A DNA stretch of 64,000 nucleotides, taken from positions 315,295 to 379,294 of the forward strand of contig NIVC01000652.1 of NCBI GenBank assembly GCA_002269645.1, written 5' to 3'. This DNA comes from Macrostomum lignano (lineage: Eukaryota). Below, piece after piece: positions 7,626 to 64,000 of the stretch. Both the position numbers and the translations under genes were made by a program. The notes under the pieces are model-generated. The model worked only from the letters and a program-made list of their open reading frames with translations. It did no database searches and was not told the DNA's origin. Every line of letters starts with the position of its first letter. Position 1 is the first letter of the stretch.

Positions 7626-7632
7626 TTGAGCA

Positions 7633-8961: not shown

Positions 8962-8978
8962 AACTCAAATAATACTTC

Positions 8979-11637: not shown

Positions 11638-11679
11638 ACCCTGACGATGTCCTAATGCAAATGGACGAAATGCATCGGC
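11638..11679 (+). ncRNA. Minimal type I hammerhead ribozyme (Penelope 3' pLTR)
   Basis: Identical to 8920-8961; predicted cleavage after 11676. Confidence 0.75.
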
Positions 11680-12254
11680 AACTCAAATAATACTTCATGT
11701 TGATATTTACCTTTATTTAGGTAATTATCAATTTTTAATTGTTAGGAATAGTTAGCTTATGTTACAATTAACAAATATTTAACACCAAACTAAATGACAA
11801 AACAAATATATTAGGTAATCAGCCTCCTAGACCCTTACTAGCATAGTCTTAAAGTATAATAATATTTAATATTTATTTAATATTTTAATATTTAGACTTA
11901 GAAACTTTATCTTATTCTGATATTTCAATGTTTAACACTATCCATGATCATTGATTTCAATTAGCTACATGCTCTATACTAACATAATATATGTTTAGTA
12001 ATCTAACACATAAGGCTAGGCTATGTAAGAGCCAATACAAAACTGGGAAAAGCACAATTGAGAGTTCCAGGCAAGAAAGGAGCATGGAATTTGAATTCAA
12101 TTCATGCAGTATTTAGAGTGAATATTTGAGTGCATTAAAACAAACTTAGTATAGTATTCATAACTTAATGATTGCATATTAGTAGTTGGTGCTTCTAGGA
12201 ATTATGAAGCAAGTTATTAATTAATATTTAAATATTAGTCACAATGTTATAATA

Positions 12255-42182: not shown

Positions 42183-42832
42183 TTAAGTTGGCGTTCGTTC
42201 TCTTGGAAATAAGTAGTCGGCAGGGGGCGCTGTACACTCTGTGTGAGCTTGAGCCTGTGTAGATGCCCGTGTGGGGCACGCCTGCCTCCTGGCTGTCTCA
42301 TGGGCAAGCCGAGGCTCCCACGGTCACGCGTATCCGCGAGTCAGTGCTTTGATTGCAGAAAACTCCTGTTATGCGCCAGCTACAGGCGAGAGCCTTGGCG
42401 TGCATTTCCACCCTGTTTGACCCCCTTTGTCTCCTTAGCAAGTTTTGTTTTATTTAAATTGCAATCGCAGCAGCTTCTGGGCTTCTCGTAATTAAAGCTT
42501 CATCAAGTCAGTTTGGAGTCTGACTAATATTGAGATGATTCATATTTTTGAAAGCTGCGTAGACTTATTAGAATTTTTTATATGGGGTTGTTAGTCATGC
42601 AGGGTAGGGAAAGGCTTAGTCACTGAGCACGTCTGTGCTATTATTAGAATCAGAATAGACCAGTATTTCGTATAGAGGTTGTTTGCAGAGATATTCTGGA
42701 GACAGAGGGCAATGTACACTAGCGGGGGCTACCGCAGTTCTGGTGTGAGCCTACTTTTAAAGCAGAGATATTTGCTGGCAGAGCCCCCATAGTTTTCTCT
42801 CCTGCCGCCATTTGCAGCGACAAGCTGTAGGA

Positions 42833-45800: not shown

Positions 45801-46049
45801 CAGCAGCGGCAGCAGCCGCAGACCTCCTACGACAGGGCGTTCAGCGAAAACCTGGGCGAGATGGAGCATGGCATGGGCCGGCTGAAGCAGCTGGCCATGG
45901 GGCTGGGCGGCGAGATCGACAGGCAGAACTCGCAGCTGGAGCGAATGTCGGTGAAGACAGACAAGACGAACGCCAAGATGGACGAGCAGAACACGCAGAT
46001 GAACCGCATTCTCTATGGCAGCAAGGCGCCGCCGGCGGCTAAGAAGTGA
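42833..46049 (+). CDS. SNAP29: Qbc-SNARE SNAP29, about 274 aa, 3 exons
   Basis: Exons 42833-43012, 43821-44159 and 45744-46049 (all phase 0). N-terminal NPF motifs, Qb SNARE motif (AQELVRQGEVLNRTEEKLDHI) and Qc SNARE motif (LKQLAMGLGGEIDRQNSQLERM). No palmitoylated Cys cluster, unlike SNAP25/23. Confidence 0.9.
43036..43604. repeat. G-rich about 25-bp minisatellite in SNAP29 intron 1
   Basis: Unit GGGGCAGATGGGGTGGAGGGAGTCT / ...GAGACT. Confidence 0.95.
44245..45706. repeat. 24-bp hairpin-unit minisatellite in SNAP29 intron 2
   Basis: Unit GG(T/G)GAGACTGCTGAGTGTCTCAAT, about 60 copies. Confidence 0.95.
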
Positions 46050-47002
46050 GCCCGGCCCGATGCTGCCCGAGAATTCCCGCACGAGTATGACGCAATTCCT
46101 TGTCGCTGTGTCTTATTAGCAGTCGCGGGTATAAGCTGTGCAGGCAACTCTGACCTGTGTGCCCCAAACCTGCTTACTCAGAACTTGCGTTCGATTATTG
46201 ATTTTTTGGATTGGATTGGATTCTCTCTATAAAAAACAAATTAATCAAATTCTGCCTGCTCTCTTCACTTTATTTCTTTCATGTAAAAGTAATTTATGAT
46301 TACATATGCGTCTGTATTTAAAAAGCTAAACTTCACATTAGTTGATTGAATAGATGATTTATATGCTTACTCGGGACTCGTGTTGAATGGTTTTTTACCT
46401 CACTAACACTCCAGACGTCAATGGGATGCTTTCACCCGGATATCTTAAATTAATAAAACTCCGGAACCGAAATATCATTTCTGATTCAAATTATTTGAAA
46501 GACCAAGCAAAATTGGCATTGAAACCGTCTCAATTGAGCCTCCTGATACACGGCTTTTGCATTTATCCAGTTAGCCAGAAGGCAACGAGGGAGAGAGATA
46601 AGAAGAACGAGACTGAACTGGCCAGACCACAGATAATAGAATTAGATGGGCCACTCAGCACATTTGCGTGTAATCTACTTTCAGTTCAGTAGTAAGTTAA
46701 ACAAGCATTTTGATGTATTTTAAAGCCAAGGCTCAATTTATTGGCTCTTACCCACCAGCTTCAACCTTCCAACCGCGCCTTTCCACACCACACTACCCCT
46801 CGCCCGCCCCCCCCACCAATTTTATTTCCGTTCTCGGAATTCCAGCCTAAAGCTGCCATGTACATTCCAGTGGCCCATGTACATTATGGGTGAACCAATT
46901 AGCAAGTTGTTTACGTCTTCTGTGGGCTTCTAAACTTATCAGTCATTTTAAACTGCCTTTTTATAAAATTTTTATAAAGTGTCTATATTATTCTTTGCTA
47001 CT

Positions 47003-49971
47003 CACGCCTATGCAGAAGCTGAAAAATGGGGAAAGAAAATTCCCTAAGAAACTAATGCTTTTCCCAGCCCCAAGGACCTATGCAGATTTCAAAAACAGTG
47101 TCAGACAAATCTAATCGCCTTGTCAAAAATGGTAATATGAATTTTTATATTATATGCAAATTACATGTAAGATGATAGATATTTAAGGCGAAACCCATCG
47201 ATAATATTAATGTTAATATAAGTTCGTAGTTTTAATATTATTTTTAATCATTAAAGGAACGTGCAAATGTATTAGTATTAATATTATAAAATGAGAACCA
47301 TGCACTTATTATTGCTAATGTCCGTATGGAATAAAGTGCGCATGGATATTAAGTACACAAGCTAAATCCTAGAAATCTTGGCAGGCATGAAAATGCTTGA
47401 CATCAAATATGGCTGGAATTGTAGCTAACAACTGCGCGCAGCAGGCATTCTGCATACTGCAAATGCCCCAGAGGCCTGCAAAACCGCTGCCACGTCGAAC
47501 GAAAGTCGCTGTGTGCAGACTCGACTGCCTGCTCACTGAAGGTCCCAAGGCCTGAGTTGAATCGCTCGCAGAACTCCGGAACATGGTGGAAAAGGGCGTG
47601 CATCTTAGGTGTCGGCACCAGCTTCAGTTCAGCGCAGCAGGATTCCAGCTGGGCAATCTTCTGGCAAAAGTCGCTCATCAGCTGTTGCCCAAAGCATGCT
47701 TGGCGAACAGCATCGAATGCCATGAGAGCAGACGCATAGCCCTGGAGCCTTGATGGCAGGTTGCTCTTGAGCTCTTGAGCTTTAAGCAGCAATCTGACAC
47801 ACGCAGGGCCTTCCAGACACCCGCCGTGGTACTGCTCGCGACAGATTCCAGCTGAATGCGCCCACTTGTATGCCTTGTCGTCGCCTCAAGCTGAGTTCAG
47901 CTGATCGAGCAGTTTGTTGGTCACACCAAGCATGATGTGCAGCTCTGGTGGTGGCACGAGGTCCAGCATTGGCGTAGAATCAGCCCCAGGGAGAAGAGGC
48001 TGTCTGACACAGCTTGCGTAGTTTCTTGCCAGTCGCTGGCAGCTACCAGCAGCCTCGAATGCCGTGGCCATCCGACGAATGGATCCAAGGGTTCTTATGG
48101 AACCGGCAACTTGCCACGGCGCCTGCCCCTCACAGTAGAGACAAGGATGAGCTGCGGCATGACTTTGAAGGCCACACAGGATGTTGGCTAGCTTGAAGTC
48201 GCAAGCGACTGTGAACTTAATCGATGTCAAGTCTAGCTCATCTAGAAGTGCTCGCACATTTGCATAGTTCTCCTGGACATCCTCAGCAATCGCGATGATA
48301 AACAGTTTTTTTACGCCAAAGTTGCTTATTCGCGACTCCCTGCTCAGCTTCTTAGGTGTGGACTCTGCCTGTGGTTCGGTAGGCAGTACTGGGGCGACAC
48401 TAAGGCAGATTTTTAGCGAGCCACCACCTCCGTCCATCCCCAGCTTCAATCTCACATCGAACTCACTAAATCCTCGCTTTGAGCAAATGAAGCTCAGCAG
48501 TCCCTGCAGATCGGGGCATATGACGGAACATCTTGTGGTATCAGTAAAGCTGCCACCTGAGGACTTTTGAGTGAATTTGAGCTGCCGCATCTCAAAAAAA
48601 CTCTCCGCGATGCTGCCTGCGGCTGCCAGAGCTGCCCGCAGTCCGGGTTGCACGGCCTTACGACTGCCCTCCGCCTGCCTGATAATTGTGGCTGCCATGT
48701 TTGTCTGCCGGTCACTCAGATTGAGAGATGTCTTTAACGTTACTAGTGTCTCGGTCCTCAGCGCTCTCTGCTCATTTGAATCACTTGCATGCCTCAGCTG
48801 CATTGGTGGGCCACCGGTGGCGCTGGAAATAGAAGCCGTTGATCCATGTCCTGATGCTGCTGCTGCTCTTAGCTTTTCACGCATCACGTCATGAGCGATG
48901 TGCTCTTTTGATGTAGGGCTGAGCGTGCGCAGGTACTGCAACTTGCTGGAGACGCTGCACTCGTGCCTTAGGCCTTTGCCCACAAGTGAGTGGCACCTAG
49001 TGCAGCGCTTCTCCGAGTCTCTGTCCTGGCTTCGAGTTGTTTCTGCAGGTCGTCCTTGGGGCAATTTATGGTTGGCCCGGCTGCTGTCAGACATGTATGG
49101 GTGCCAGACCGCCACCCGCTTGTTTGATGGGCTGGAAACTACCTGGCAGATACAGCAGGAGCAGTGCGGATGCTCACGTGTGAGTTGTGGCAAAACCTCC
49201 AAATCTGCAACAATTTGAAGGTATGGCAGTCGAGCAGGCAGTTCTTGCGGTACAGGTGACGTCTGTGACTGCAATTTCTTGATGCAGCAGCTGCACATGC
49301 CTCCTGGCAGAGTATTACGGATGTAGGCATGACAGAATTCTGACAGGATAAATTGCTCGATGAGTTCTGCCTGAGCAGCTGAAATAACGCGATCGGCTTT
49401 GCGGAAGCAGAGGATGCAGCACCAGATACGATTCTCTTCATGTGTGCGTCGAAAGTTTGGCATCGCGAGGCCAGAGAACTGATTTGAGTACTGAGGGTAA
49501 TTGTTTCAATTGACTGCAACTTTATTTTCAAAGGAAGTCTGCGTGTTAGCAAACTTGTGATAAGAGGCATGTTCTACTTTATGAATGTACATAGTCTGTT
49601 CATTGTTTCTCAATCCCTTAATCACAATAGATCTCAATAAATATGTACATTTGAGTTGTCTGCCAAAATTTCTATCTAATAATGTACAGCATTATATAAC
49701 GCCCTTAAATTTATGCTCTAAACTTTGCAATTGATGCCTGCTCTTGTTACGCAATTGTTTTCAGTACTTGCAATGGCGCAACTGACGAATCTAATACTGA
49801 ACATGCAGCTGAGAACACATAATTTCAATTTTCCATTCTATTATTTTTGGACAAGGCGATTAGATTTGTCTGACACTGTTTTTGGAATCTGCATGGGTCC
49901 TTGGGGCTGGGAAAAGCATTAGTTTCTTAGGGAATTTTCTTTCCCCATTTTTCAGCTTCTGCATAGGCGTG
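47003..49971 (-). mobile_element. Chapaev-type DNA transposon, 2969 bp, full length
   Basis: About 122-bp TIRs (47003-47124 and 49850-49971; about 2 mismatches) with 5'-CAC...GTG-3' termini. Exact 4-bp TSD TACT (46999-47002 and 49972-49975); a 5-bp TSD does not fit. Confidence 0.88.
47403..49463 (-). pseudogene. RAG1/Transib-like DDE transposase (about 686 aa) with one in-frame TGA at 47886-47888
   Basis: ORFs 47886-49463 and 47403-47792 are in the same frame: LDQLNSA*GDDKAYKWAHSAGICREQYHGGCLEGPACVRLLLKAQE. N-terminal H-x7-CxxC...CxxC...H-x4-CxxC, GRP, MDGGG (D), CDFK (D), CLYC, PELHIMLG, HALFHHVPE and SEQAVES (E). Confidence 0.85.
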
Positions 49972-50349
49972 TACTGAACTGAAAGTAGAAAGCTGTTTTG
50001 CTAAGTATATATGCCTGAGTGGCCCATCTAGTTATTGTATCTGTGGCCTAGACAGGGAGAGAAAACAGAGTAAACAGAGACAACGAAGGCATGCACACGG
50101 AAGGCCTGTGACGGAATTGTAGAGTAAAGTAAGCCAGCCTGCATCAAACCAATTTTAACAATACGCATGTGCTATTGTGAGAGACGTCAGTGAAACCTTG
50201 GAGGTAATCCACCTATACTAAAAATATAATTAAAACTTCATAAACTGGACAATCGATAACAAGAAGTGGCAAACGGACTCGAGATCCACCGGCCACACCC
50301 ATGTTCGCATGAAAAAATGGCAGGTGTTAGCAGACGTGACGAGCGCATT

Positions 50350-51308
50350 GGGGCCTAAAGTGTCCAACACGCCGGTTTTTCTGCCTTTGAGGCTCTCCAG
50401 CATGCATGAATTCTACGCGTGCGGAATTGTTCAGAAGCTTTGCAAATAATTTTCATGATTTTCTGATGGGGCCTGAAGTGTCCAACACGCCGATTTCTTG
50501 TGCCTTGGGGCTCTCGACCATGAATGAATTATTCTACGCGTGCAGTGTTCAGAAGCTTTGCAAATAATTTTCATGATTTTCTGATGGGGCCTGAAGTGTC
50601 CAACACGCCGATTTCTTGTGCCTTGGGGCTCTCGACCATGAATGAATTATTCTACGCGTGCGGAATTGTTCAGAAGCTTTGCAAATAATTTTAATGATTT
50701 TCTGATGGGGCCTGAAGTGTCCAACACGCCGATTTCTTGTGCCTTGGGCTCTCGACCATGAATGAATTATTCTACGCGTGCGGAATTGTTCAGAAGCTTT
50801 GCAAATAATTTTCATGATTTTCTGATGGGGCCTGAAGTGTCCAACACGCCGATTTCTTGTGCCTTGGGGCTCTCGACCATGAATGAATTATTCTACGCGT
50901 GCAGAAGTGTTCAGAAGCTTTGCAAATAATTTTCATGATTTTCTGATGGGGCCTGAAGTGTCCAACACGCCGATTTCTTGTGCCTTGGGGCTCTCGACCA
51001 TGAATGAATTATTCTACGCGTGCAGAAGTGTTCAGAAGCTTTGCAAATAATTTTCATGATTTTCTGATGGGGCCTGAAGTGTCCAACACGCCGATTTCTT
51101 GTGCCTTGGGCTCTCGACCATGAATGAATTATTCTACGCGTGCAGAAGTGTTCAGAAGCTTTGCAAATAATTTTCATGATTTTCTGATGGGGCCTGAAGT
51201 GTCCAACACGCCGATTTCTTGTGCCTTGGGGCTCTCGACCATGAATGAATTATTCTACGCGTGCAGAAGTGTTCAGAAGCTTTGCAAATAATTTTCATGA
51301 TTTTCTGA
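50350..51308. repeat. About 120-bp tandem satellite, 8 copies
   Basis: Unit starts GGGCCTGAAGTGTCCAACACGCCG at about 50351, 50469, 50587, 50708, 50828, 50949, 51070 and 51190. Confidence 0.93.
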
Positions 51309-51580
51309 GGATCTACATGTCGTGGGATTTGCTCGTGTGCAAACGTACTGTCGGGATCCTCGATGAACTGTTTCACCACTAAACGCTTTCACATTAAATG
51401 TCCCCACGAATGTGCAAGCTATAAACCAAATCTGTAAGTTGTATGACCTTGGTGGTCGTTAGCAGCACAGTATAAAATGCGAGTGACTCACTCGAAAGGC
51501 AAAATCTAAATTTTGATTATACATTCAAGTCTTGTGTATTTTATTAATCCAGCGCATACTCAGTTTCGCACGGCGTTTGC

Positions 51581-51945
51581 CTACTCTTTATAGAAAAACG
51601 CCAACTCAATAATGATGACCTTGTGATATGGCTTCGGCGTGACCTCCATTGCTTGCGCATTCGCGCATTCAAAGTTATTGTACCGCCTGAACGTTGGGAA
51701 GTGTTTCTCCTTGCCGGATGGCAGGCATCGGAAATTCAAGTTCTCTGCGCTGCTTCTGGCGTTTGACTTTGCCATTAAAAGAAACTTTTTATATCAACTG
51801 TCTTCGAAAACGTGTAAAACAGAAAGTCACGCCCGGGACCATCAGCGTAAGCGACTCCGTACGACCACACATTCAAGTCTATAGAATACCTGCACGTTTT
51901 CGATATGCCGTCTTTAGAAGAGCACTCGATATTAACTCGATCTAA
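51581..51945 (-). CDS. Possible terminal exon of the Cys-rich gene (needs one frameshift)
   Basis: After an AG near 51943 the frame reads DRVNIECSSKDGISKTCRYSIDLNVWSYG...IKSFF. It shifts in a T-run into MAKSNAR...KVIIIELAFFYKE*. The link via a 43-bp intron (52206-52164) and a short exon is unresolved. Confidence 0.35.
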
Positions 51946-52206
51946 ATGTCGGTGGGAAAGTGGATATAATTTTTATTCACGTTTTTATAAGTTCCAATAT
52001 AAGTAAATTATGAGTACCGTCCCGAACAGATGTCTAAAAATAGCTCCAAAGCTGGTATCCCGTCCTACTGGCACAGGGACTGCCTCAGGCCACAACTTGT
52101 GACGCTCGATTAGCAATAAACTCCTGTCAGGTCAAGTCGTTGACAATGTCCCCAAAAAGCTAACTACAAAAAATAAAACGGAAAATAAATTATAAAATCA
52201 GCTCAC

Positions 52207-55200
52207 CATAACATTTATATTTTGTGAGTGTCGGGGTGAACTCGGGGCACTCGTCGCATATGCTCATACCAGATCGATATGACAAATTGTTCTCCAAGTT
52301 GCACTGTATGCATTCGGTAGCCCGCTGAATACTGGATCGCGTGCCAGGGGGGCAGGGCGTGCAGGTGCTACTACCAGTTTTGTTCGTGAAGTAGCCAGGG
52401 AAACAATCAAAGCATTTGTCTGAACCAGGGCTTGGCGCGTATTGCCCTACCCGGCAAAGACTGCAACGCGTAGAGCCAGGCTCCTCAGCCACGCTGCCAG
52501 GGGGCACATCGTGCAGCTAGAGGTGCCCTCCCGATCTGCAAAATGCCCCCCGAACATTGAATGCAGTGCCTTGATCCAGCAGGCGAAAAATGACCCTTGG
52601 GGCACAAGCGGCAGGACAAAGCACCCGAACGGCTCCAGCTGCCTGCATTGCATAACTCGCACAAAGAGGCACCGCTATGGCCGCTGTATCTGCCAGGCGA
52701 CAAGGTTTGCACTCACTTGAGCCGTTAGAATTAGCAAAAGTTCCAGAGAACATCGCCTGCAAGAAGAAGATCCAGCAGACGAGGAAAATGATCCAGGGAT
52801 GCAGGCAGTACACGCACTTGAACCAAGTCCACTCCAGGTGCCTACGGGACAAGGATTATAGGAGGTCGAACCGACTCCATTTATAAAATAGCCAGCAGGA
52901 CTAGGGGTGCATTCTATTGAATTCAAAGTCGAAGAAAAATATCCAGCAGGACACTTGGTGCATTCCTTGGACCCTTCTTGTTGGCGAAGCTACCCGTGGA
53001 CACTTAGTGCAGGCGCTTAACCCGGCTCGGTCAGCAATGCTTCCTGCCGGGCACTGGGTGCATGCCGAAGAGCCGACAGTTAGATTGTTCCAGGCTCGCA
53101 GTTCGTACACGCGGCCGCGCCTTTACCGCTCCACGTGCCTGCAGGACACGGTTTAGCGCTTGTCGAGCCAGTCTTGTCGACGAATGATCCCGGTGGACTC
53201 GGTGTACACTTGCTAGATCCGGCGATCGCAAACGTTCCCGCCTTGCACTTGGTCGGCTCGGAGGCGCCGTTGGTACACACGCTTCCAGCAGGACACTTGG
53301 TGCATTCCTTGGACCCCTTCTTGTTGGCGAAGCTACCCGGTGGACACTTAGTGCAGGCGCTTAACCCGGCTCGGTCAGCAATGCTTCCTGCCGGGCACTG
53401 GGTGCATGCCGAAGAGCCGACAGTTGAGATTGTTCCAGGCTCGCAGTTCGTACACGCGGCCGCGCCTTTACCGCTCCACGTGCCTGCAGGACACGGTTTA
53501 GCGCTTGTCGAGCCAGTCTTGTCGACGAATGATCCCGGTGGACTCGGTGTACACTTGCTAGATCCGGCGATCGCAAACGTTCCCGCCTTGCACTTGGTCG
53601 GCTCGGAGGCGCCGTTGGTACACACGCTTCCAGCAGGACACTTGGTGCATTCCTTGGACCCCTTCTTGTTGGCGAAGCTACCCGGTGGACACTTAGTGCA
53701 GGCGCTTAACCCGGCTCGGTCAGCAATGCTTCCTGCCGGGCACTGGGTGCATGCCGAAGAGCCGACAGTTGAGATTGTTCCAGGCTCGCAGTTCGTACAC
53801 GCGGCCGCGCCTTTACCGCTCCACGTGCCTGCAGGACACGGTTTAGCGCTTGTCGAGCCAGTCTTGTCGACGAATGATCCCGGTGGACTCGGTGTACACT
53901 TGCTAGATCCGGCGATCGCAAACGTTCCCGCCTTGCACTTGGTCGGCTCGGAGGCGCCGTTGGTACACACGCTTCCAGCAGGACACTTGGTGCATTCCTT
54001 GGACCCCTTCTTGTTGGCGAAGCTACCCGGTGGACACTTAGTGCAGGCGCTTAACCCGGCTCGTCAGCAATGCTTCCTGCCGGGCACTGGGTGCATGCCG
54101 AAGAGCCGACAGTTGAGATTGTTCCAGGCTCGCAGTTCGTACACGCGGCCGCGCCTTTACCGCTCCACGTGCCTGCAGGACACGGTTTAGCGCTTGTCGA
54201 GCCAGTCTTGTCGACGAATGATCCCGGTGGACTCGGTGTACACTTGCTAGATCCGGCGATCGCAAACGTTCCCGCCTTGCACTTGGTCGGCTCGGAGGCG
54301 CCGTTGGTACACACGCTTCCAGCAGGACACTTGGTGCATTCCTTGGACCCCTTCTTGTTGGCGAAGCTACCCGGTGGACACTTAGTGCAGGCGCTTAACC
54401 CGGCTCGGTCAGCAATGCTTCCTGCCGGGCACTGGGTGCATGCCGAAGAGCCGACAGTTGAGATTGTTCCAGGCTCGCAGTTCGTACACGCGGCCGCGCC
54501 TTTACCGCTCCACGTGCCTGCAGGACACGGTTTAGCGCTTGTCGAGCCAGTCTTGTCGACGAATGATCCCGGTGGACTCGGTGTACACTTGCTAGATCCG
54601 GCGATCGCAAACGTTCCCGCCTTGCACTTGGTCGGCTCGGAGGCGCCGTTGGTACACACGCTTCCAGCAGGACACTTGGTGCATTCCTTGGACCCCTTCT
54701 TGTTGGCGAAGCTACCCGGTGGACACTTAGTGCAGGCGCTTAACCCGGCTCGGTCAGCAATGCTTCCTGCCGGGCACTGGGTGCATGCCGAAGAGCCGAC
54801 AGTTGAGATTGTTCCAGGCTCGCAGTTCGTACACGCGGCCGCGCCTTTACCGCTCCACGTGCCTGCAGGACACGGTTTAGCGCTTGTCGAGCCAGTCTTG
54901 TCGACGAATGATCCCGGTGGACTCGGTGTACACTTGCTAGATCCGGCGATCGCAAACGTTCCCGCCTTGCACTTGGTCGGCTCGGAGGCGCCGTTGGTAC
55001 ACACGCTTCCAGCAGGACACTTGGTGCATTCCTTGGACCCCTTCTTGTTGGCGAAGCTACCCGGTGGACACTTAGTGCAGGCGCTTAACCCGGCTCGGTC
55101 AGCAATGCTTCCTGCCGGGCACTGGGTGCATGCCGAAGAGCCGACAGTTGAGATTGTTCCAGGCTCGCAGTTCGTACACGCGGCCGCGCCTTTACCGCTC

Positions 55201-58200
55201 CACGTGCCTGCAGGACACGGTTTAGCGCTTGTCGAGCCAGTCTTGTCGACGAATGATCCCGGTGGACTCGGTGTACACTTGCTAGATCCGGCGATCGCAA
55301 ACGTTCCCGCCTTGCACTTGGTCGGCTCGGAGGCGCCGTTGGTACACACGCTTCCAGCAGGACACTTGGTGCATTCCTTGGACCCCTTCTTGTTGGCGAA
55401 GCTACCCGGTGGACACTTAGTGCAGGCGCTTAACCCGGCTCGGTCAGCAATGCTTCCTGCCGGGCACTGGGTGCATGCCGAAGAGCCGACAGTTGAGATT
55501 GTTCCAGGCTCGCAGTTCGTACACGCGGCCGCGCCTTTACCGCTCCACGTGCCTGCAGGACACGGTTTAGCGCTTGTCGAGCCAGTCTTGTCGACGAATG
55601 ATCCCGGTGGACTCGGTGTACACTTGCTAGATCCGGCGATCGCAAACGTTCCCGCCTTGCACTTGGTCGGCTCGGAGGCGCCGTTGGTACACACGCTTCC
55701 AGCAGGACACTTGGTGCATTCCTTGGACCCCTTCTTGTTGGCGAAGCTACCCGGTGGACACTTAGTGCAGGCGCTTAACCCGGCTCGGTCAGCAATGCTT
55801 CCTGCCGGGCACTGGGTGCATGCCGAAGAGCCGACAGTTGAGATTGTTCCAGGCTCGCAGTTCGTACACGCGGCCGCGCCTTTACCGCTCCACGTGCCTG
55901 CAGGACACGGTTTAGCGCTTGTCGAGCCAGTCTTGTCGACGAATGATCCCGGTGGACTCGGTGTACACTTGCTAGATCCGGCGATCGCAAACGTTCCCGC
56001 CTTGCACTTGGTCGGCTCGGAGGCGCCGTGGTACACACGCTTCCAGCAGGACACTTGGTGCATTCCTTGGACCCCTTCTTGTTGGCGAAGCTACCCGGTG
56101 GACACTTAGTGCAGGCGCTTAACCCGGCTCGGTCAGCAATGCTTCCTGCCGGGCACTGGGTGCATGCCGAAGAGCCGACAGTTGAGATTGTTCCAGGCTC
56201 GCAGTTCGTACACGCGGCCGCGCCTTTACCGCTCCACGTGCCTGCAGGACACGGTTTAGCGCTTGTCGAGCCAGTCTTGTCGACGAATGATCCCGGTGGA
56301 CTCGGTGTACACTTGCTAGATCCGGCGATCGCAAACGTTCCCGCCTTGCACTTGGTCGGCTCGGAGGCGCCGTTGGTACACACGCTTCCAGCAGGACACT
56401 TGGTGCATTCCTTGGACCCCTTCTTGTTGGCGAAGCTACCCGGTGGACACTTAGTGCAGGCGCTTAACCCGGCTCGGTCAGCAATGCTTCCTGCCGGGCA
56501 CTGGGTGCATGCCGAAGAGCCGACAGTTGAGATTGTTCCAGGCTCGCAGTTCGTACACGCGGCCGCGCCTTTACCGCTCCACGTGCCTGCAGGACACGGT
56601 TTAGCGCTTGTCGAGCCAGTCTTGTCGACGAATGATCCCGGTGGACTCGGTGTACACTTGCTAGATCCGGCGATCGCAAACGTTCCCGCCTTGCACTTGG
56701 TCGGCTCGGAGGCGCCGTTGGTACACACGCTTCCAGCAGGACACTTGGTGCATTCCTTGGACCCCTTCTTGTTGGCGAAGCTACCCGGTGGACACTTAGT
56801 GCAGGCGCTTAACCCGGCTCGGTCAGCAATGCTTCCTGCCGGGCACTGGGTGCATGCCGAAGAGCCGACAGTTGAGATTGTTCCAGGCTCGCAGTTCGTA
56901 CACGCGGCCGCGCCTTTACCGCTCCACGTGCCTGCAGGACACGGTTTAGCGCTTGTCGAGCCAGTCTTGTCGACGAATGATCCCGGTGGACTCGGTGTAC
57001 ACTTGCTAGATCCGGCGATCGCAAACGTTCCCGCCTTGCACTTGGTCGGCTCGGAGGCGCCGTTGGTACACACGCTTCCAGCAGGACACTTGGTGCATTC
57101 CTTGGACCCCTTCTTGTTGGCGAAGCTACCCGGTGGACACTTAGTGCAGGCGCTTAACCCGGCTCGGTCAGCAATGCTTCCTGCCGGGCACTGGGTGCAT
57201 GCCGAAGAGCCGACAGTTGAGATTGTTCCAGGCTCGCAGTTCGTACACGCGGCCGCGCCTTTACCGCTCCACGTGCCTGCAGGACACGGTTTAGCGCTTG
57301 TCGAGCCAGTCTTGTCGACGAATGATCCCGGTGGACTCGGTGTACACTTGCTAGATCCGGCGATCGCAAACGTTCCCGCCTTGCACTTGGTCGGCTCGGA
57401 GGCGCCGTTGGTACACACGCTTCCAGCAGGACACTTGGTGCATTCCTTGGACCCCTTCTTGTTGGCGAAGCTACCCGGTGGACACTTAGTGCAGGCGCTT
57501 AACCCGGCTCGGTCAGCAATGCTTCCTGCCGGGCACTGGGTGCATGCCGAAGAGCCGACAGTTGAGATTGTTCCAGGCTCGCAGTTCGTACACGCGGCCG
57601 CGCCTTTACCGCTCCACGTGCCTGCAGGACACGGTTTAGCGCTTGTCGAGCCAGTCTTGTCGACGAATGATCCCGGTGGACTCGGTGTACACTTGCTAGA
57701 TCCGGCGATCGCAAACGTTCCCGCCTTGCACTTGGTCGGCTCGGAGGCGCCGTTGGTACACACGCTTCCAGCAGGACACTTGGTGCATTCCTTGGACCCC
57801 TTCTTGTTGGCGAAGCTACCCGGTGGACACTTAGTGCAGGCGCTTAACCGGCTCGGTCAGCAATGCTTCCTGCCGGGCACTGGGTGCATGCCGAAGAGCC
57901 GACAGTTGAGATTGTTCCAGGCTCGCAGTTCGTACACGCGGCCGCGCCTTTACCGCTCCACGTGCCTGCAGGACACGGTTTAGCGCTTGTCGAGCCAGTC
58001 TTGTCGACGAATGATCCCGGTGGACTCGGTGTACACTTGCTAGATCCGGCGATCGCAAACGTTCCCGCCTTGCACTTGGTCGGCTCGGAGGCGCCGTTGG
58101 TACACACGCTTCCAGCAGGACACTTGGTGCATTCCTTGGACCCCTTCTTGTTGGCGAAGCTACCCGGTGGACACTTAGTGCAGGCGCTTAACCCGGCTCG

Positions 58201-61200
58201 GTCAGCAATGCTTCCTGCCGGGCACTGGGTGCATGCCGAAGAGCCGACAGTTGAGATTGTTCCAGGCTCGCAGTTCGTACACGCGGCCGCGCCTTTACCG
58301 CTCCACGTGCCTGCAGGACACGGTTTAGCGCTTGTCGAGCCAGTCTTGTCGACGAATGATCCCGGTGGACTCGGTGTACACTTGCTAGATCCGGCGATCG
58401 CAAACGTTCCCGCCTTGCACTTGGTCGGCTCGGAGGCGCCGTTGGTACACACGCTTCCAGCAGGACACTTGGTGCATTCCTTGGACCCCTTCTTGTTGGC
58501 GAAGCTACCCGGTGGACACTTAGTGCAGGCGCTTAACCCGGCTCGGTCAGCAATGCTTCCTGCCGGGCACTGGGTGCATGCCGAAGAGCCGACAGTTGAG
58601 ATTGTTCCAGGCTCGCAGTTCGTACACGCGGCCGCGCCTTTACCGCTCCACGTGCCTGCAGGACACGGTTTAGCGCTTGTCGAGCCAGTCTTGTCGACGA
58701 ATGATCCCGGTGGACTCGGTGTACACTTGCTAGATCCGGCGATCGCAAACGTTCCCGCCTTGCACTTGGTCGGCTCGGAGGCGCCGTTGGTACACACGCT
58801 TCCAGCAGGACACTTGGTGCATTCCTTGGACCCCTTCTTGTTGGCGAAGCTACCCGGTGGACACTTAGTGCAGGCGCTTAACCCGGCTCGGTCAGCAATG
58901 CTTCCTGCCGGGCACTGGGTGCATGCCGAAGAGCCGACAGTTGAGATTGTTCCAGGCTCGCAGTTCGTACACGCGGCCGCGCCTTTACCGCTCCACGTGC
59001 CTGCAGGACACGGTTTAGCGCTTGTCGAGCCAGTCTTGTCGACGAATGATCCCGGTGGACTCGGTGTACACTTGCTAGATCCGGCGATCGCAAACGTTCC
59101 CGCCTTGCACTTGGTCGGCTCGGAGGCGCCGTTGGTACACACGCTTCCAGCAGGACACTTGGTGCATTCCTTGGACCCCTTCTTGTTGGCGAAGCTACCC
59201 GGTGGACACTTAGTGCAGGCGCTTAACCCGGCTCGGTCAGCAATGCTTCCTGCCGGGCACTGGGTGCATGCCGAAGAGCCGACAGTTGAGATTGTTCCAG
59301 GCTCGCAGTTCGTACACGCGGCCGCGCCTTTACCGCTCCACGTGCCTGCAGGACACGGTTTAGCGCTTGTCGAGCCAGTCTTGTCGACGAATGATCCCGG
59401 TGGACTCGGTGTACACTTGCTAGATCCGGCGATCGCAAACGTTCCCGCCTTGCACTTGGTCGGCTCGGAGGCGCCGTTGGTACACACGCTTCCAGCAGGA
59501 CACTTGGTGCATTCCTTGGACCCCTTCTTGTTGGCGAAGCTACCCGGTGGACACTTAGTGCAGGCGCTTAACCCGGCTCGGTCAGCAATGCTTCCTGCCG
59601 GGCACTGGGTGCATGCCGAAGAGCCGACAGTTGAGATTGTTCCAGGCTCGCAGTTCGTACACGCGGCCGCGCCTTTACCGCTCCACGTGCCTGCAGGACA
59701 CGGTTTAGCGCTTGTCGAGCCAGTCTTGTCGACGAATGATCCCGGTGGACTCGGTGTACACTTGCTAGATCCGGCGATCGCAAACGTTCCCGCCTTGCAC
59801 TTGGTCGGCTCGGAGGCGCCGTTGGTACACACGCTTCCAGCAGGACACTTGGTGCATTCCTTGGACCCCTTCTTGTTGGCGAAGCTACCCGGTGGACACT
59901 TAGTGCAGGCGCTTAACCCGGCTCGGTCAGCAATGCTTCCTGCCGGGCACTGGGTGCATGCCGAAGAGCCGACAGTTGAGATTGTTCCAGGCTCGCAGTT
60001 CGTACACGCGGCCGCGCCTTTACCGCTCCACGTGCCTGCAGGACACGGTTTAGCGCTTGTCGAGCCAGTCTTGTCGACGAATGATCCCGGTGGACTCGGT
60101 GTACACTTGCTAGATCCGGCGATCGCAAACGTTCCCGCCTTGCACTTGGTCGGCTCGGAGGCGCCGTTGGTACACACGCTTCCAGCAGGACACTTGGTGC
60201 ATTCCTTGGACCCCTTCTTGTTGGCGAAGCTACCCGGTGGACACTTAGTGCAGGCGCTTAACCCGGCTCGGTCAGCAATGCTTCCTGCCGGGCACTGGGT
60301 GCATGCCGAAGAGCCGACAGTTGAGATTGTTCCAGGCTCGCAGTTCGTACACGCGGCCGCGCCTTTACCGCTCCACGTGCCTGCAGGACACGGTTTAGCG
60401 CTTGTCGAGCCAGTCTTGTCGACGAATGATCCCGGTGGACTCGGTGTACACTTGCTAGATCCGGCGATCGCAAACGTTCCCGCCTTGCACTTGGTCGGCT
60501 CGGAGGCGCCGTTGGTACACACGCTTCCAGCAGGACACTTGGTGCATTCCTTGGACCCCTTCTTGTTGGCGAAGCTACCCGGTGGACACTTAGTGCAGGC
60601 GCTTAACCCGGCTCGGTCAGCAATGCTTCCTGCCGGGCACTGGGTGCATGCCGAAGAGCCGACAGTTGAGATTGTTCCAGGCTCGCAGTTCGTACACGCG
60701 GCCGCGCCTTTACCGCTCCACGTGCCTGCAGGACACGGTTTAGCGCTTGTCGAGCCAGTCTTGTCGACGAATGATCCCGGTGGACTCGGTGTACACTTGC
60801 TAGATCCGGCGATCGCAAACGTTCCCGCCTTGCACTTGGTCGGCTCGGAGGCGCCGTTGGTACACACGCTTCCAGCAGGACACTTGGTGCATTCCTTGGA
60901 CCCCTTCTTGTTGGCGAAGCTACCCGGTGGACACTTAGTGCAGGCGCTTAACCCGGCTCGGTCAGCAATGCTTCCTGCCGGGCACTGGGTGCATGCCGAA
61001 GAGCCGACAGTTGAGATTGTTCCAGGCTCGCAGTTCGTACACGCGGCCGCGCCTTTACCGCTCCACGTGCCTGCAGGACACGGTTTAGCGCTTGTCGAGC
61101 CAGTCTTGTCGACGAATGATCCCGGTGGACTCGGTGTACACTTGCTAGATCCGGCGATCGCAAACGTTCCCGCCTTGCACTTGGTCGGCTCGGAGGCGCC

Positions 61201-64000
61201 GTTGGTACACACGCTTCCAGCAGGACACTTGGTGCATTCCTTGGACCCCTTCTTGTTGGCGAAGCTACCCGGTGGACACTTAGTGCAGGCGCTTAACCCG
61301 GCTCGGTCAGCAATGCTTCCTGCCGGGCACTGGGTGCATGCCGAAGAGCCGACAGTTGAGATTGTTCCAGGCTCGCAGTTCGTACACGCGGCCGCGCCTT
61401 TACCGCTCCACGTGCCTGCAGGACACGGTTTAGCGCTTGTCGAGCCAGTCTTGTCGACGAATGATCCCGGTGGACTCGGTGTACACTTGCTAGATCCGGC
61501 GATCGCAAACGTTCCCGCCTTGCACTTGGTCGGCTCGGAGGCGCCGTTGGTACACACGCTTCCAGCAGGACACTTGGTGCATTCCTTGGACCCCTTCTTG
61601 TTGGCGAAGCTACCCGGTGGACACTTAGTGCAGGCGCTTAACCCGGCTCGGTCAGCAATGCTTCCTGCCGGGCACTGGGTGCATGCCGAAGAGCCGACAG
61701 TTGAGATTGTTCCAGGCTCGCAGTTCGTACACGCGGCCGCGCCTTTACCGCTCCACGTGCCTGCAGGACACGGTTTAGCGCTTGTCGAGCCAGTCTTGTC
61801 GACGAATGATCCCGGTGGACTCGGTGTACACTTGCTAGATCCGGCGATCGCAAACGTTCCCGCCTTGCACTTGGTCGGCTCGGAGGCGCCGTTGGTACAC
61901 ACGCTTCCAGCAGGACACTTGGTGCATTCCTTGGACCCCTTCTTGTTGGCGAAGCTACCCGGTGGACACTTAGTGCAGGCGCTTAACCCGGCTCGGTCAG
62001 CAATGCTTCCTGCCGGGCACTGGGTGCATGCCGAAGAGCCGACAGTTGAGATTGTTCCAGGCTCGCAGTTCGTACACGCGGCCGCGCCTTTACCGCTCCA
62101 CGTGCCTGCAGGACACGGTTTAGCGCTTGTCGAGCCAGTCTTGTCGACGAATGATCCCGGTGGACTCGGTGTACACTTGCTAGATCCGGCGATCGCAAAC
62201 GTTCCCGCCTTGCACTTGGTCGGCTCGGAGGCGCCGTTGGTACACACGCTTCCAGCAGGACACTTGGTGCATTCCTTGGACCCCTTCTTGTTGGCGAAGC
62301 TACCCGGTGGACACTTAGTGCAGGCGCTTAACCCGGCTCGGTCAGCAATGCTTCCTGCCGGGCACTGGGTGCATGCCGAAGAGCCGACAGTTGAGATTGT
62401 TCCAGGCTCGCAGTTCGTACACGCGGCCGCGCCTTTACCGCTCCACACGTGCCTGCAGGACACGGTTTAGCGCTTGTCGAGCCAGTCTTGTCGACGAATG
62501 ATCCCGGTGGACTCGGTGTACACTTGCTAGATCCGGCGATCGCAAACGTTCCCGCCTTGCACTTGGTCGGCTCGGAGGCGCCGTTGGTACACACGCTTCC
62601 AGCAGGACACTTGGTGCATTCCTTGGACCCCTTCTTGTTGGCGAAGCTACCGGTGGACACTTAGTGCAGGCGCTTAACCCGGCTCGGTCAGCAATGCTTC
62701 CTGCCGGGCACTGGGTGCATGCCGAAGAGCCGACAGTTGAGATTGTTCCAGGCTCGCAGTTCGTACACGCGGCCGCGCCTTTACCGCTCCACGTGCCTGC
62801 AGGACACGGTTTAGCGCTTGTCGAGCCAGTCTTGTCGACGAATGATCCCGGTGGACTCGGTGTACACTTGCTAGATCCGGCGATCGCAAACGTTCCCGCC
62901 TTGCACTTGGTCGGCTCGGAGGCGCCGTTGGTACACACGCTTCCAGCAGGACACTTGGTGCATTCCTTGGACCCCTTCTTGTTGGCGAAGCTACCCGGTG
63001 GACACTTAGTGCAGGCGCTTAACCCGGTCGGTCAGCAATGCTTCCTGCCGGGCACTGGGTGCATGCCGAAGAGCCGACAGTTGAGATTGTTCCAGGCTCG
63101 CAGTTCGTACACGCGGCCGCGCCTTTACCGCTCCACGTGCCTGCAGGACACGGTTTAGCGCTTGTCGAGCCAGTCTTGTCGACGAATGATCCCGGTGGAC
63201 TCGGTGTACACTTGCTAGATCCGGCGATCGCAAACGTTCCCGCCTTGCACTTGGTCGGCTCGGAGGCGCCGTTGGTACACACGCTTCCAGCAGGACACTT
63301 GGTGCATTCCTTGGACCCCTTCTTGTTGGCGAAGCTACCCGGTGGACACTTAGTGCAGGCGCTTAACCCGGCTCGGTCAGCAATGCTTCCTGCCGGGCAC
63401 TGGGTGCATGCCGAAGAGCCGACAGTTGAGATTGTTCCAGGCTCGCAGTTCGTACACGCGGCCGCGCCTTTACCGCTCCACGTGCCTGCAGGACACGGTT
63501 TAGCGCTTGTCGAGCCAGTCTTGTCGACGAATGATCCCGGTGGACTCGGTGTACACTTGCTAGATCCGGCGATCGCAAACGTTCCCGCCTTGCACTTGGT
63601 CGGCTCGGAGGCGCCGTTGGTACACACGCTTCCAGCAGGACACTTGGTGCATTCCTTGGACCCCTTCTTGTTGGCGAAGCTACCCGGTGGACACTTAGTG
63701 CAGGCGCTTAACCCGGCTCGGTCAGCAATGCTTCCTGCGGGCACTGGGTGCATGCCGTTATGCCACTCGTGCTGTAAGAGCTGAATGTTCCTGGGTTGCA
63801 GACAATGCAGTTTTGATTTCCTTCTTGGTATTTGTAGCTTCCAGCAGGGCATGGCACGCAGAGGTTACTTGTTGTCACGCTTTTTTTGATGGCCTACGGG
63901 ACACCTTGGTATACAGTCATATCTTTGGCTACCTTTTTTATCATCAAAGTTGGTGATTTGATTTTGACGTTGCGACACTCTTTGCAGGCCATACTGTCGT
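52207..64000 (-). CDS. Giant exon of a cysteine-rich repeat protein (CxxC-x-P/A-G repeats, ephrin-receptor-like/GCC2-GCC3 type); starts outside the window; scattered 1-2-bp indels
   Basis: Minus-strand frames encode continuous C-x2-C-x-(P/A)G modules through the array and through unique flanking sequence on both sides (NLCVPCPAGSYKYQEG at about 63800-63860; CSLCRVGQY...CDECPEF at 52210-52500). The exon ends at a TATG|GTGAGC donor at 52206. Confidence 0.8.
52943..63755 (-). repeat. 345-bp coding tandem repeat, about 31 copies (115 aa each)
   Basis: ORF-track period of 345 bp; 12 Cys and 7 internal sub-modules per unit. Confidence 0.97.

What the first reader, a model, noticed from the sequence alone, without database searches (positions are those of the whole stretch)
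52207..64000. Giant single-exon Cys-rich protein of at least 3,900 aa, probably an extracellular rod
Seen: more than 11.7 kb of uninterrupted coding-like sequence made of C-x2-C-x-(P/A)G modules, with divergent modules flanking about 31 identical 115-aa blocks. Known: such modules occur in SCUBE/SVEP1/ELAPOR/Eph ectodomains and, as long arrays, in protist surface antigens. Inference: an undescribed lineage-specific secreted or surface protein (adhesive, mucus, cocoon or reproductive secretion are candidates). It is Lys/Ser/Thr/Gly/Ala-rich and heavily disulfide-bonded. The 5' end lies beyond the window.
Basis: partly seen in the sequence, partly recalled or inferred. Interest (0 to 1): 0.7.

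Follow-up and report, generated by a model that had tools for sequence, protein, structure and literature searches.

The report
Giant cysteine-rich rod gene, flatworm
This is a real but poorly annotated gene of the flatworm Macrostomum lignano that encodes a protein of at least about 4,050 residues, built mostly from 31 identical 115-residue cysteine-rich blocks and predicted to form a long disulfide-laddered rod; the breaks in its reading frame are assembly errors, and its function is untested.

Summary
The repeat is real. A 345-bp unit occurs 31.4 times (window 52942-63757, minus strand), and the 31 full copies have no substitutions. The reading frame is not uninterrupted in this assembly: 17 small indels break it, and the longest open stretch is 1,540 aa. 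The same locus in the Mlig_3_7 assembly of Macrostomum lignano (99.7% identical; 1 mismatch, 37 one-base indels) lacks 8 of the 10 breaks that can be compared and reads open for 1,184 aa. The breaks are therefore homopolymer consensus errors, not pseudogene decay. The gene has at least two exons: a giant exon (from beyond 64000 to 52207), a 265-nt intron, and a last exon (51941-51581) encoding a 120-aa lineage-specific domain. The unit holds seven ~16-aa Ephrin_rec_like modules (Pfam 5e-26). AlphaFold gives pLDDT 96, and the closest solved fold is the cysteine-rich rod of the Chlamydomonas mastigoneme protein MST1 (TM 0.8). The product encoded in the window is about 4,050 aa, 10% Cys, with net charge about +230. 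It is a paralogue of two short M. lignano genes, with the array inserted between their conserved ends. It is most likely a secreted structural rod. Secretion, tissue and function are untested. New member of a known kind; moderate interest.

The parts
63758..64000 (-). 5' part of the giant exon inside the window. It holds about 5 divergent Cys-rich modules (CKEC..., CIPRCPVGHQ, CVPCPAGSY, CIVCNPGTF, CTQCPAGS). The exon continues beyond the window end.
   Evidence: The stitched translation is colinear with residues 283-341 of paralogue P0014 (BLASTP 3e-36). There are three frame breaks, in an A6 run, an A7 run and a GG. No splice acceptor is needed, because homology runs up to base 64000.
52942..63757 (-). 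Tandem array of a 345-bp unit x 31.35 copies, giving 31 identical 115-aa blocks. Each block holds 7 modules of about 16 aa and 12 Cys.
   Evidence: TRF. Copy-by-copy alignment shows 0 substitutions and 7 small indels. Pfam Ephrin_rec_like 5e-26. AlphaFold pLDDT 96.2. Foldseek against MST1 gives TM 0.78-0.81.
52207..52941 (-). 3' part of the giant exon. It comprises the old diverged copy of the unit (copy 32 starts at 53029) plus further divergent modules, about 16 in all, ending ...CDECPEFTPTLTKYKCY.
   Evidence: It reads in frame in the Mlig_3_7 copy of the locus apart from two residual run-length errors. Unit versus copy 32 gives pN 0.31 and pS 0.80.
51942..52206 (-). Intron of 265 nt, GT...AG, phase 1.
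   Evidence: The donor is TATG|GTGAGC and the acceptor is TTTAG|AT. The junction KYKCY|DRVN is used in gene models P0001 and P0121. The intron sits at the same position in paralogues P0014 and P0127.
51581..51941 (-). Last exon: a 120-aa non-repeat C-terminal domain (DRVNIECSSKDG...ELAFFYKE) followed by a TAG stop at 51583-51581.
   Evidence: tblastn of P0001. It is intact in L002. There is one frame break at 51785 in the window only. No Pfam hit and no credible homologue in 1.84 billion representatives. AlphaFold pLDDT is below 50.
51540..51545 (-). AATAAA polyadenylation signal, 36 nt after the stop codon.
   Evidence: Read directly from the sequence. Its use as a signal is inferred.

Best explanation
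The region is the main exon, plus a short terminal exon, of an intact protein-coding gene of the flatworm Macrostomum lignano. The gene belongs to a small lineage-specific family with this layout: an N-terminal domain of about 280 aa with no Pfam match, then a run of Ephrin_rec_like (TNFR/ELAPOR-type) cysteine-rich modules, then a conserved phase-1 intron, then a C-terminal domain of about 120 aa.

In this member, a 115-aa block of seven modules has been amplified to 31 nucleotide-identical copies, presumably by unequal crossing-over or gene conversion (inferred). The window-encoded part of the product is therefore about 4,050 aa and about 394 kDa. The 17 frame breaks in the window are single-base consensus errors of a PacBio-based assembly, not mutations.

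Each module is a small disulfide-pinned beta-hairpin, and the modules stack end to end into a thin rod like the cysteine-rich part of the algal mastigoneme protein MST1. With about 240 modules, and the roughly 11 A disulfide spacing reported for MST1, the rod would be on the order of 0.2-0.3 micrometres long (inference). It is strongly cationic (about +6.6 per unit, about +230 overall) and Ser/Thr-rich.

The most likely role is a secreted or extracellular structural or cohesive scaffold that binds polyanionic partners such as mucus, glycocalyx or other secretory products, with rod length set by repeat number.

Shown: the anatomy, the family membership, that the frame is intact in a second assembly, the predicted fold, and long-term purifying selection on the module pattern. 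Inferred: secretion, length, charge-based binding, and the tissue and process.
For: Organism and locus: L002 (GCA_002269645.1, NIVC01003578.1:1-13216) matches window 42820-56034 at 99.71%, with 1 mismatch and 37 one-base indels.

Frame breaks are errors.
- At 8 of the 10 comparable break sites (51785, 52698, 52745, 52971, 52995, 53081, 54062, 56029), L002 carries the extra base. It reads open for 1,184 aa plus an intact last exon.
- At about 52545, each assembly has a different one-base fault. Together they give the canonical module CSGGTFADREG.
- The C-run at about 52500 is in frame in the homeologous models P0001 and P0121.
- The 31 copies carry zero substitutions against 7 indels, which is not a mutational spectrum.
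- Both public assemblies derive from the same PacBio reads, and ML2 is reported to have more broken ORFs than Mlig_3_7 (PMC5730564).

Coding history: the unit and its diverged copy 32 keep every aligned Cys and Gly, with pN 0.31 against saturated pS 0.80.

Transcription: the GenBank annotation of Mlig_3_7 is built only from RNA-seq-derived transcripts, and it places a 268-aa 5'-partial CDS on this exon (L002 9660-10466).

Family.
- Pfam Ephrin_rec_like 5e-26, TNFR_ELAPOR1_6th 2e-14.
- Both ends are colinear with paralogue P0014.
- The intron position is conserved in P0014 and P0127.
- The C-terminal region is weakly similar to that of P0127 (1e-11).

Fold.
- AlphaFold on two units gives pLDDT 96.2 and pTM 0.81, with hairpins only.
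- Foldseek best hits are MST1 (8wa2, 9b4h) with TMq 0.78-0.81 and rmsd 3.2-3.8 A over the whole model, then ELAPOR1.
- phmmer against PDB gives MST1 5e-34.
- The MST1 region is a disulfide ladder with about 11 A spacing (PMC10602792).

Composition and charge.
Against: - No N-terminus is available, so no signal peptide has been seen. The N-termini of paralogue P0014 and of an environmental homologue, P0126, show no obvious signal peptide, although both may be 5'-incomplete.
- The two assemblies are not independent at the read level, so a shared error and a real frameshift at the C5 run (about 52500) cannot be told apart. If that break is real, this copy would lose its last ~95 aa of modules and the C-terminal domain.
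- The breaks in the 5' flank and in array copies 2-18 could not be checked, because only 13 kb of the second contig could be fetched.
- Transcript evidence covers only the 3' end of the exon, and I infer it from the origin of the annotation. I did not see reads.
- An open frame within the array is not evidence of selection, because there has been no time for decay.
- The exact copy number and the perfect identity could be partly flattened by consensus calling.
- No paper in the searchable library links M. lignano to this domain, so there is no expression, localisation or proteomic support.
Confidence: 0.65

Rival explanations
1. Dead gene turned satellite. The frameshifts are real, the exon no longer encodes a protein, and the 345-bp unit is simply a recently amplified minisatellite in a genome that is very rich in them.
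For: There are 17 frame breaks in the window. One break (the C5 run at about 52500) and a run-length fault at about 52545 persist in the second assembly. The window is full of other tandem arrays. Identical copies give no evidence of selection.
Against: Eight of the 10 comparable breaks are absent from Mlig_3_7, which reads open for 1,184 aa. There are no substitutions and no in-frame stop codons anywhere in about 12 kb once the indels are set aside. The only variants are homopolymer indels. The flanks and the last exon are 97-100% identical at protein level to two homeologous gene models that read in frame. A transcript-based CDS lies on the exon.
Confidence: 0.07
2. A real gene, but a membrane-anchored surface receptor or coat protein like ELAPOR, Eph receptors or protist variant surface proteins, rather than a secreted structural rod.
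For: The same module type builds the ectodomains of ELAPOR1 and Eph receptors and of Giardia VSPs. The missing N-terminus could carry a signal anchor.
Against: No hydrophobic stretch long enough to span a membrane occurs in the last exon or anywhere in the window-encoded part (direct reading). The Pfam VSP match is far below threshold (E 0.19). There is no kinase, MRH, 7TM or death domain. A ligand-binding receptor is not expected to carry 31 identical blocks.
Confidence: 0.12
3. The gene is real, but the array as drawn is an assembly construct. The true copy number, and some sequence variation between copies, differ from the 31 identical units shown.
For: Both assemblies use the same PacBio CLR reads. 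Consensus and short-read polishing cannot separate identical copies. Indel density differs about 11-fold between array and flanks, and the errors cluster locally.
Against: The array (10.8 kb) is within PacBio read length. Two different assemblers gave identical units over the 9 copies that could be compared. This rival changes the size of the protein, not its nature.
Confidence: 0.3

Closest known systems
Chlamydomonas reinhardtii mastigoneme protein MST1, cysteine-rich tandem region (PDB 8tx1, 8wa2, 9b4h)
   Same: Best match among solved structures by sequence (phmmer 5e-34) and by fold (TMq 0.78-0.81 over the whole 230-residue model). It has the same C-x2-C-P-x-G-[ST]-[FYW] modules stacked into an extracellular rod with a ladder of disulfides about 11 A apart (PMC10602792).
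   Different: MST1 has nine Ig-like domains and a glycosylated polyproline-II helix and polymerises into a ciliary hair. None of these is seen here. Identity is only about 27%. MST1 has no array of identical blocks. The similarity is at module level and does not indicate orthology.
Macrostomum lignano paralogues BOX15_Mlig012635g1 (P0014, 654 aa) and BOX15_Mlig025896g1 (P0127, 424 aa, partial)
   Same: Same order of parts: furin-like Cys-rich lead-in, module run, terminal CxxC...KC[HY] module, phase-1 intron at the same place, short last exon.
   Different: They carry about 18 modules and no tandem array. Identity is 32-38%. The C-terminal domain of P0014 is much shorter.
UniProt A0A1I8JM00 / A0A1I8H4D0 (ML2 gene models, 337 aa, 'Ephrin_rec_like domain-containing protein')
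   Same: They cover the last unit, the 3' flank and the last exon, at 97-100% identity to the window. They are homeologous or duplicate copies of this gene.
   Different: They are 5'-truncated fragments that start inside the array. They also splice out 282 nt of module-coding sequence (window 52817-52536), probably to dodge frameshifts. They differ from the window at 2-3 residues (EFAPT versus EFTPT, DRVNT versus DRVNI).
ELAPOR1/2 (KIAA1324) ectodomain; Eph receptor cysteine-rich domain; SCUBE and SVEP1 GCC2/GCC3 repeats
   Same: Same Pfam module families (PF07699, PF23091). ELAPOR1 is the second-best PDB match (1e-8 by sequence, 1e-5 by fold).
   Different: Those proteins have a few modules embedded among MRH, EGF, CUB, sushi, FN3 or kinase domains and a transmembrane helix. 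None of these is found in the window-encoded part.
M. lignano adhesion proteins Mlig-ap1 and Mlig-ap2 (PMC6410801)
   Same: Giant (5,407 and 14,794 aa) secreted proteins from the same species, Cys-rich, with long arrays of large repeats. Mlig-ap1 is strongly cationic and binds anionic sugars.
   Different: Different domains (vWD, C8, TIL, EGF, C-lectin, TSP1, LDLa) and different repeat units (255 and 221 aa; KR-rich regions). They are not this gene.
Giardia VSPs and ciliate surface antigens
   Same: Long runs of CxxC modules.
   Different: The Pfam VSP match is below threshold (E 0.19 against a 31.4-bit cut-off). There is no C-terminal transmembrane helix or CRGKA tail (direct reading).

Membership tests
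Ephrin_rec_like (PF07699, formerly GCC2_GCC3) repeat proteins | Profile match above the curated gathering score | tested here: met
   90.7 bits against a cut-off of 23.1, E 5e-26, 7 stretches in two units. The same holds for P0001 and P0014.
Ephrin_rec_like (PF07699, formerly GCC2_GCC3) repeat proteins | Periodic C-x2-C-P-x-G-[ST]-[FYW] modules of about 16 aa with conserved Cys and Gly columns | tested here: met
   In the alignment with 59 homologues, the Cys and Gly columns are invariant or at least 90% conserved. The unit lacks three consensus Cys (P40, S59, A73) and has one extra (C33), leaving 12, an even number.
Ephrin_rec_like (PF07699, formerly GCC2_GCC3) repeat proteins | Fold: stacked disulfide-pinned beta-hairpins forming an elongated rod | tested here: met
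   AlphaFold pLDDT 96.2 with hairpins only. Foldseek TM 0.8 to MST1. This is a prediction, not an experiment.
Mastigoneme protein MST1 | N-terminal Ig-like domains and a hydroxyproline-rich polyproline-II helix; polymerises on cilia | tested here: not met
   There is no Ig, sushi or Pro-rich segment in the window-encoded 4,050 aa or in paralogue P0014. The N-terminus of this gene was not available.
ELAPOR1/2 | MRH-like N-terminal domain, single transmembrane helix and cytoplasmic tail | tested here: not met
   There is no transmembrane-length hydrophobic stretch after the modules; the protein ends ...KVIIIELAFFYKE. There is no MRH Pfam hit in P0014. Only the module HMM PF23091 matches.
TNF receptor superfamily | 3-6 CRDs followed by a transmembrane helix and a signalling tail | tested here: not met
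   TNFR_c6 scores 34.8 bits, above its 29.4 cut-off, but lies under the stronger Ephrin_rec_like match. There is no TM helix or death domain. Foldseek TM to TNFRs is only 0.15-0.29.
Giardia VSP / protist variant surface antigens | VSP profile match, C-terminal TM helix and conserved tail | tested here: not met
   PF03302 scores 11 bits against a 31.4 cut-off. There is no TM helix.
Mlig-ap1 / Mlig-ap2 temporary-adhesion proteins | vWD/C8/TIL, EGF-Ca, C-lectin, TSP1 and LDLa domains; 255/221-aa repeats or KR-rich regions | tested here: not met
   None of these domains is in the Pfam scans. The repeat length here is 115 aa. The description comes from PMC6410801.
Secreted / extracellular protein | N-terminal signal peptide | not testable with these tools
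   The 5' end lies beyond base 64000. The N-termini of paralogues are uninformative and possibly incomplete.
Expressed gene | Transcript and peptide evidence | tested here: inconclusive
   A transcript-derived partial CDS lies on the 3' end of the exon in Mlig_3_7. No reads, cDNA or peptides could be inspected.

The most novel reading that the evidence does not exclude
An animal has built, from protist-style Ephrin_rec_like modules, a polycationic disulfide-ladder rod about 0.25 micrometres long. This rod would be the load-bearing or cohesive fibre of a flatworm-specific secretion (rhabdites or mucus, cement or shell glands, or the glycocalyx of the ciliated epidermis). It would be functionally parallel to algal mastigoneme filaments, with a length tuned by a fast-evolving 31-copy coding repeat that varies between homeologues and strains.
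Probability: 0.15. Interest if true: 0.6.

Novelty: new member of a known kind. Interest (0 to 1): 0.33.

Why it matters
For M. lignano, a model for regeneration, bioadhesion and sexual selection, this adds a roughly 400-kDa, probably secreted protein. It is present in current annotations only as fragments of 268-337 aa, so it is invisible to expression, RNAi and proteomic screens that rely on those models.

It is also a clean worked example of how homopolymer errors in PacBio-era assemblies make giant repeat-rich genes look like pseudogenes, and of how a second assembly of the same locus resolves the question.

Biologically, it shows a domain type best known from receptors and protist coats being used for a very long, highly charged rod. 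If localisation places it in rhabdites, adhesive or cement secretions, it would be a new structural component and a candidate biomaterial. If the array length differs between the three or more homeologous copies, it could help in studying concerted evolution after the recent genome duplication in this species.

Tried and rejected
1. Identity with the known giant adhesive proteins Mlig-ap1 and Mlig-ap2: rejected on domain content and repeat length.

2. Pseudogene or satellite: rejected as the main reading after the comparison with L002.

3. The internal 'intron' used by the ML2 models (window 52817-52536): judged an annotation device for dodging frameshifts. It encodes canonical modules, and the transcript-based Mlig_3_7 CDS reads straight through it.

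4. Plus-strand reading: the mirror ORF of 1,540 aa (57848-62467) is spurious. Only the minus-strand frame matches Pfam.

5. Function of the C-terminal domain:
- Pfam gave nothing.
- The word-indexed search found only its own cluster.
- The full HMMER search of 1.84 billion representatives gave three weak hits (E >= 1.5e-5) whose only Pfam matches are unrelated families, none with a significant aligned stretch.
- The AlphaFold model was unusable, with pLDDT below 50.

6. N-terminal domain of the family: no Pfam hit. The only homologues are one environmental contig (P0126, ERZ17086556) and a paralogue. My recollection that it resembles farnesoic-acid-methyltransferase-type domains was not supported by any test.

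7. Fetching more of the second assembly:
- P0001 and the neighbouring 525-aa ORF are not on record.
- As a result, the 5' flank, copies 1-22 of the array and the N-terminus could not be checked.

8. Literature:
- No paper in the library mentions M. lignano together with ephrin or GCC2.
- A broader search for Ephrin_rec_like repeat proteins and one for Cys-rich gland or rhabdite proteins gave nothing specific.
- The held supplements of PMC5730564 contain no hit.

9. A chimeric query (C-terminal domain + linker + neighbouring SNARE fragment) was used to save a capped search. It found the neighbouring gene that gave access to L002.

Full report
OBSERVATION

Tandem Repeats Finder reports a 345-bp unit repeated 31.4 times at window 52942-63757, with 99% matches and score 21551. 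The coding sense is the minus strand. There the unit reads RAGLSACTKCPPGSFANKKGSKECTKCPAGSVCTNGASEPTKCKAGTFAIAGSSKCTPSPPGSFVDKTGSTSAKPCPAGTWSGKGAAACTNCEPGTISTVGSSACTQCPAGSIAD.

Aligning every copy to the consensus shows that copies 1-31 carry no substitution at all. The only differences are six one-base deletions in short base runs and one GT insertion.

The claim of an uninterrupted frame fails as the sequence stands. No frame is open across the region, and the longest open stretch is 1,540 aa at 57847-62466. Following the Cys-rich frame through the flanks gives 17 frame-breaking indels:
- 3 in the 5' flank (two in A6/A7 runs, one in GG);
- 7 in the array;
- 6 in the 3' flank;
- 1 in a downstream exon.

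ORGANISM AND GENE

A search with one unit plus the conceptually joined 3' flank found a 337-aa Macrostomum lignano protein at the top (UniProt A0A1I8JM00; P0001). It has a near-identical sister, A0A1I8H4D0. After ...KYKCY these models continue with DRVN(T/I)ECSSKDG...ELAFFYKE. That sequence maps to window 51941-51584 across a 265-nt GT...AG phase-1 intron, and is followed by TAG (51583-51581) and AATAAA (51545-51540).

So the gene has at least two exons. At the other end, the first codons of the window are colinear with residues 283-341 of a 654-aa M. lignano paralogue, BOX15_Mlig012635g1 (P0014). The last modules are colinear with its residues 545-636. The exon therefore runs beyond base 64000. 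About 280 further N-terminal residues are expected, and the array sits between ends that are conserved in the family. The intron lies at the same position in P0014 and in a second paralogue, BOX15_Mlig025896g1 (P0127), whose last exon also encodes a domain of about 116 aa.

ARE THE FRAMESHIFTS REAL?

A neighbouring gene gave access to the same locus in the Mlig_3_7 assembly. That gene is BOX15_Mlig022200g1, a SNAP-25/29-type SNARE protein. The locus is L002, NIVC01003578.1:1-13216.

L002 matches window 42820-56034 at 99.71%, and the differences are 1 mismatch and 37 one-base indels. At eight of the ten comparable break sites (51785, 52698, 52745, 52971, 52995, 53081, 54062, 56029), Mlig_3_7 has one more base. 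It then reads open for 1,184 aa through nine units and most of the flank, and its last exon is intact.

At about 52545 the two assemblies carry different one-base faults. Combining them gives the canonical module CSGGTFADREG. The remaining break, a C5 run at about 52500, is shared by both assemblies of this locus but is in frame in the homeologous models.

Both assemblies were built from the same PacBio reads. Mlig_3_7 was additionally polished with Illumina and RNA-seq data, and is reported to have more intact ORFs than ML2 (PMC5730564). A spectrum of 17 indels, no substitutions and no stop codons is a sequencing signature, not a mutational one. I conclude that the gene is most probably intact.

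Two caveats remain. The break at about 52500 could be real in this copy. The seven breaks above 56034 could not be compared.

IS IT A CODING SEQUENCE WITH A HISTORY?

The identical copies say nothing about selection. The diverged neighbouring copy (copy 32) does. Over 65 aligned codons, the proportion of nonsynonymous differences is 0.31 while synonymous differences are saturated at 0.80, and every aligned Cys and Gly is kept. The unit is therefore old as a protein module, and its amplification or homogenisation is recent. GC3 is 0.63 in the unit against 0.42 in the flank, which would fit frequent conversion but was not tested.

The GenBank annotation of Mlig_3_7 is derived solely from RNA-seq-based transcripts. 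It places a 268-aa 5'-partial CDS on this exon (L002 9660-10466). That CDS reads straight through the segment that the ML2 models splice out, and ends at the residual false stop. I take this as evidence that at least the 3' end is transcribed.

WHAT THE PROTEIN IS

Two units match these Pfam families:
- Ephrin_rec_like, 90.7 bits, E 5e-26;
- NCD3G;
- TNFR_ELAPOR1_6th;
- TNFR_c6.

Each unit holds seven modules of about 16 aa of the type C-x2-C-P-x-G-[ST]-[FYW] and has 12 Cys. Relative to the family consensus, three Cys are missing and one is extra.

AlphaFold with a 60-sequence alignment gives pLDDT 96.2 and pTM 0.81, with nothing but short hairpins. By sequence and by fold, the closest solved structure is the cysteine-rich tandem of the Chlamydomonas mastigoneme protein MST1 (phmmer 5e-34; Foldseek TM 0.78-0.81, rmsd 3.2-3.8 A over the whole model). 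ELAPOR1 follows, and TNFR and Eph ectodomains are only weak matches. In MST1 this region is a spiral ladder of disulfides about 11 A apart (PMC10602792).

With about 240 modules, the protein would be a rod of roughly 0.2-0.3 micrometres; this is an inference. The window-encoded product has these properties:
- about 4,050 aa and about 394 kDa;
- 417 Cys;
- pI about 9 and net charge about +230;
- 25% Ser+Thr;
- no N-glycosylation sequon in the unit.

The C-terminal 120-aa domain has no Pfam match, no credible homologue among 1.84 billion representative proteins, only weak similarity to the C-terminus of P0127, and no confident model. There is no transmembrane-length hydrophobic segment after the modules.

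HOW IT MOST LIKELY WORKS

A disulfide-laddered module stack of this type is known only from extracellular or luminal proteins. I therefore read the product as a secreted or extracellular rod whose length is set by repeat number. Its high positive charge would bind polyanionic partners such as mucus, glycocalyx or other secretions. This resembles the charge-based cohesion shown for Mlig-ap1 in the same species (PMC6410801), although it is not that protein.

Secretion, tissue and partners are inferred. No signal peptide could be examined, and the N-termini of the paralogue and of an environmental homologue are uninformative.

RIVALS

- A pseudogene turned satellite now looks unlikely (0.07).
- A membrane-anchored receptor or coat protein is possible only through an unseen N-terminal anchor (0.12).
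- Independently of these, the exact copy number and the perfect identity of the copies may be partly products of consensus calling (0.3 that they differ materially).

COMPARISON AND NOVELTY

The gene meets the defining features of the Ephrin_rec_like repeat family (profile, motif periodicity, predicted fold). It fails those of MST1, ELAPOR, TNFR, VSP and Mlig-ap1/2. It is a greatly expanded member of a small M. lignano family, and is known so far only as fragments labelled 'Ephrin_rec_like domain-containing protein' or 'hypothetical protein'. No paper in the searchable library connects this species with the domain.

I rate it a new member of a known kind and of moderate interest. It is useful for flatworm secretion biology and as a caution about frameshifted giant repeat genes in long-read assemblies.

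Noticed in passing
window 50349-51308: A 121-bp tandem repeat x8 (96% identity) begins about 230 bp downstream of the giant gene's AATAAA signal. It holds several of the assembly-to-assembly indel differences.
   Followed up: no
window 43815-46049 (+): The gene BOX15_Mlig022200g1 (P0122, 214 aa, partial) has a C-terminal SNARE motif of the SNAP-25/SNAP-29 type (PDB phmmer 3e-7) but no Pfam hit. A 24-bp minisatellite (44243-45703, 61 copies) lies inside the gene span, between its exons, and creates spurious ORFs of up to 594 aa.
   Followed up: partly
window 47403-49463 (-): Two adjacent ORFs (525 aa and 129 aa) with a Cys/His-rich N-terminus have no Pfam match and no record in the gene index. 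They are probably a transposon-derived gene.
   Followed up: partly
window 17237-19572 (+): An ankyrin-repeat DHHC palmitoyltransferase (ZDHHC13/17-like) has two exons and no frameshift over about 2 kb of coding sequence. I used it as an internal yardstick for the local error rate.
   Followed up: partly
window 6655-13382: Several Penelope-like retroelement fragments (reverse transcriptase plus GIY-YIG) lie on both strands, and a Tc1/mariner transposase ORF lies at 12384-13382.
   Followed up: no
window 20421-45703: This is a dense field of at least 15 micro- and minisatellite arrays (periods 4-46 bp, up to 180 copies) with strong strand skews. It fits the reported 15% tandem-repeat content of this genome.
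   Followed up: no
window 42820-56034 versus L002: Differences between the two assemblies are clustered and change direction. The window is longer in the 43-45.6 kb minisatellites, and Mlig_3_7 is longer from 46.4 kb onward. Within the gene, indels are about 11 times denser in the unique flanks than in the array. This is unexplained; polishing may have failed locally.
   Followed up: partly
window 52536-52817 (-): The two ML2 gene models remove this 282-nt segment as a GT...AG intron, although it encodes six canonical modules. The transcript-based Mlig_3_7 model reads through it.
   Followed up: yes
window 57848-62467 (+): The antisense strand of the array carries a mirror ORF of 1,540 aa. This is a by-product of a GC-rich unit that lacks stop codons in that frame, not a gene.
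   Followed up: yes
window 52942-63757 versus 52207-52941: Third-codon-position GC is 0.63 in the amplified unit and 0.42 in the adjacent divergent modules. This could reflect GC-biased conversion in the array.
   Followed up: no
L001 3510-4574: A MACPF-domain gene lies 5.4 kb upstream of the paralogue BOX15_Mlig012635g1. Retroelement-like sequence lies directly upstream of that paralogue's annotated start.
   Followed up: no
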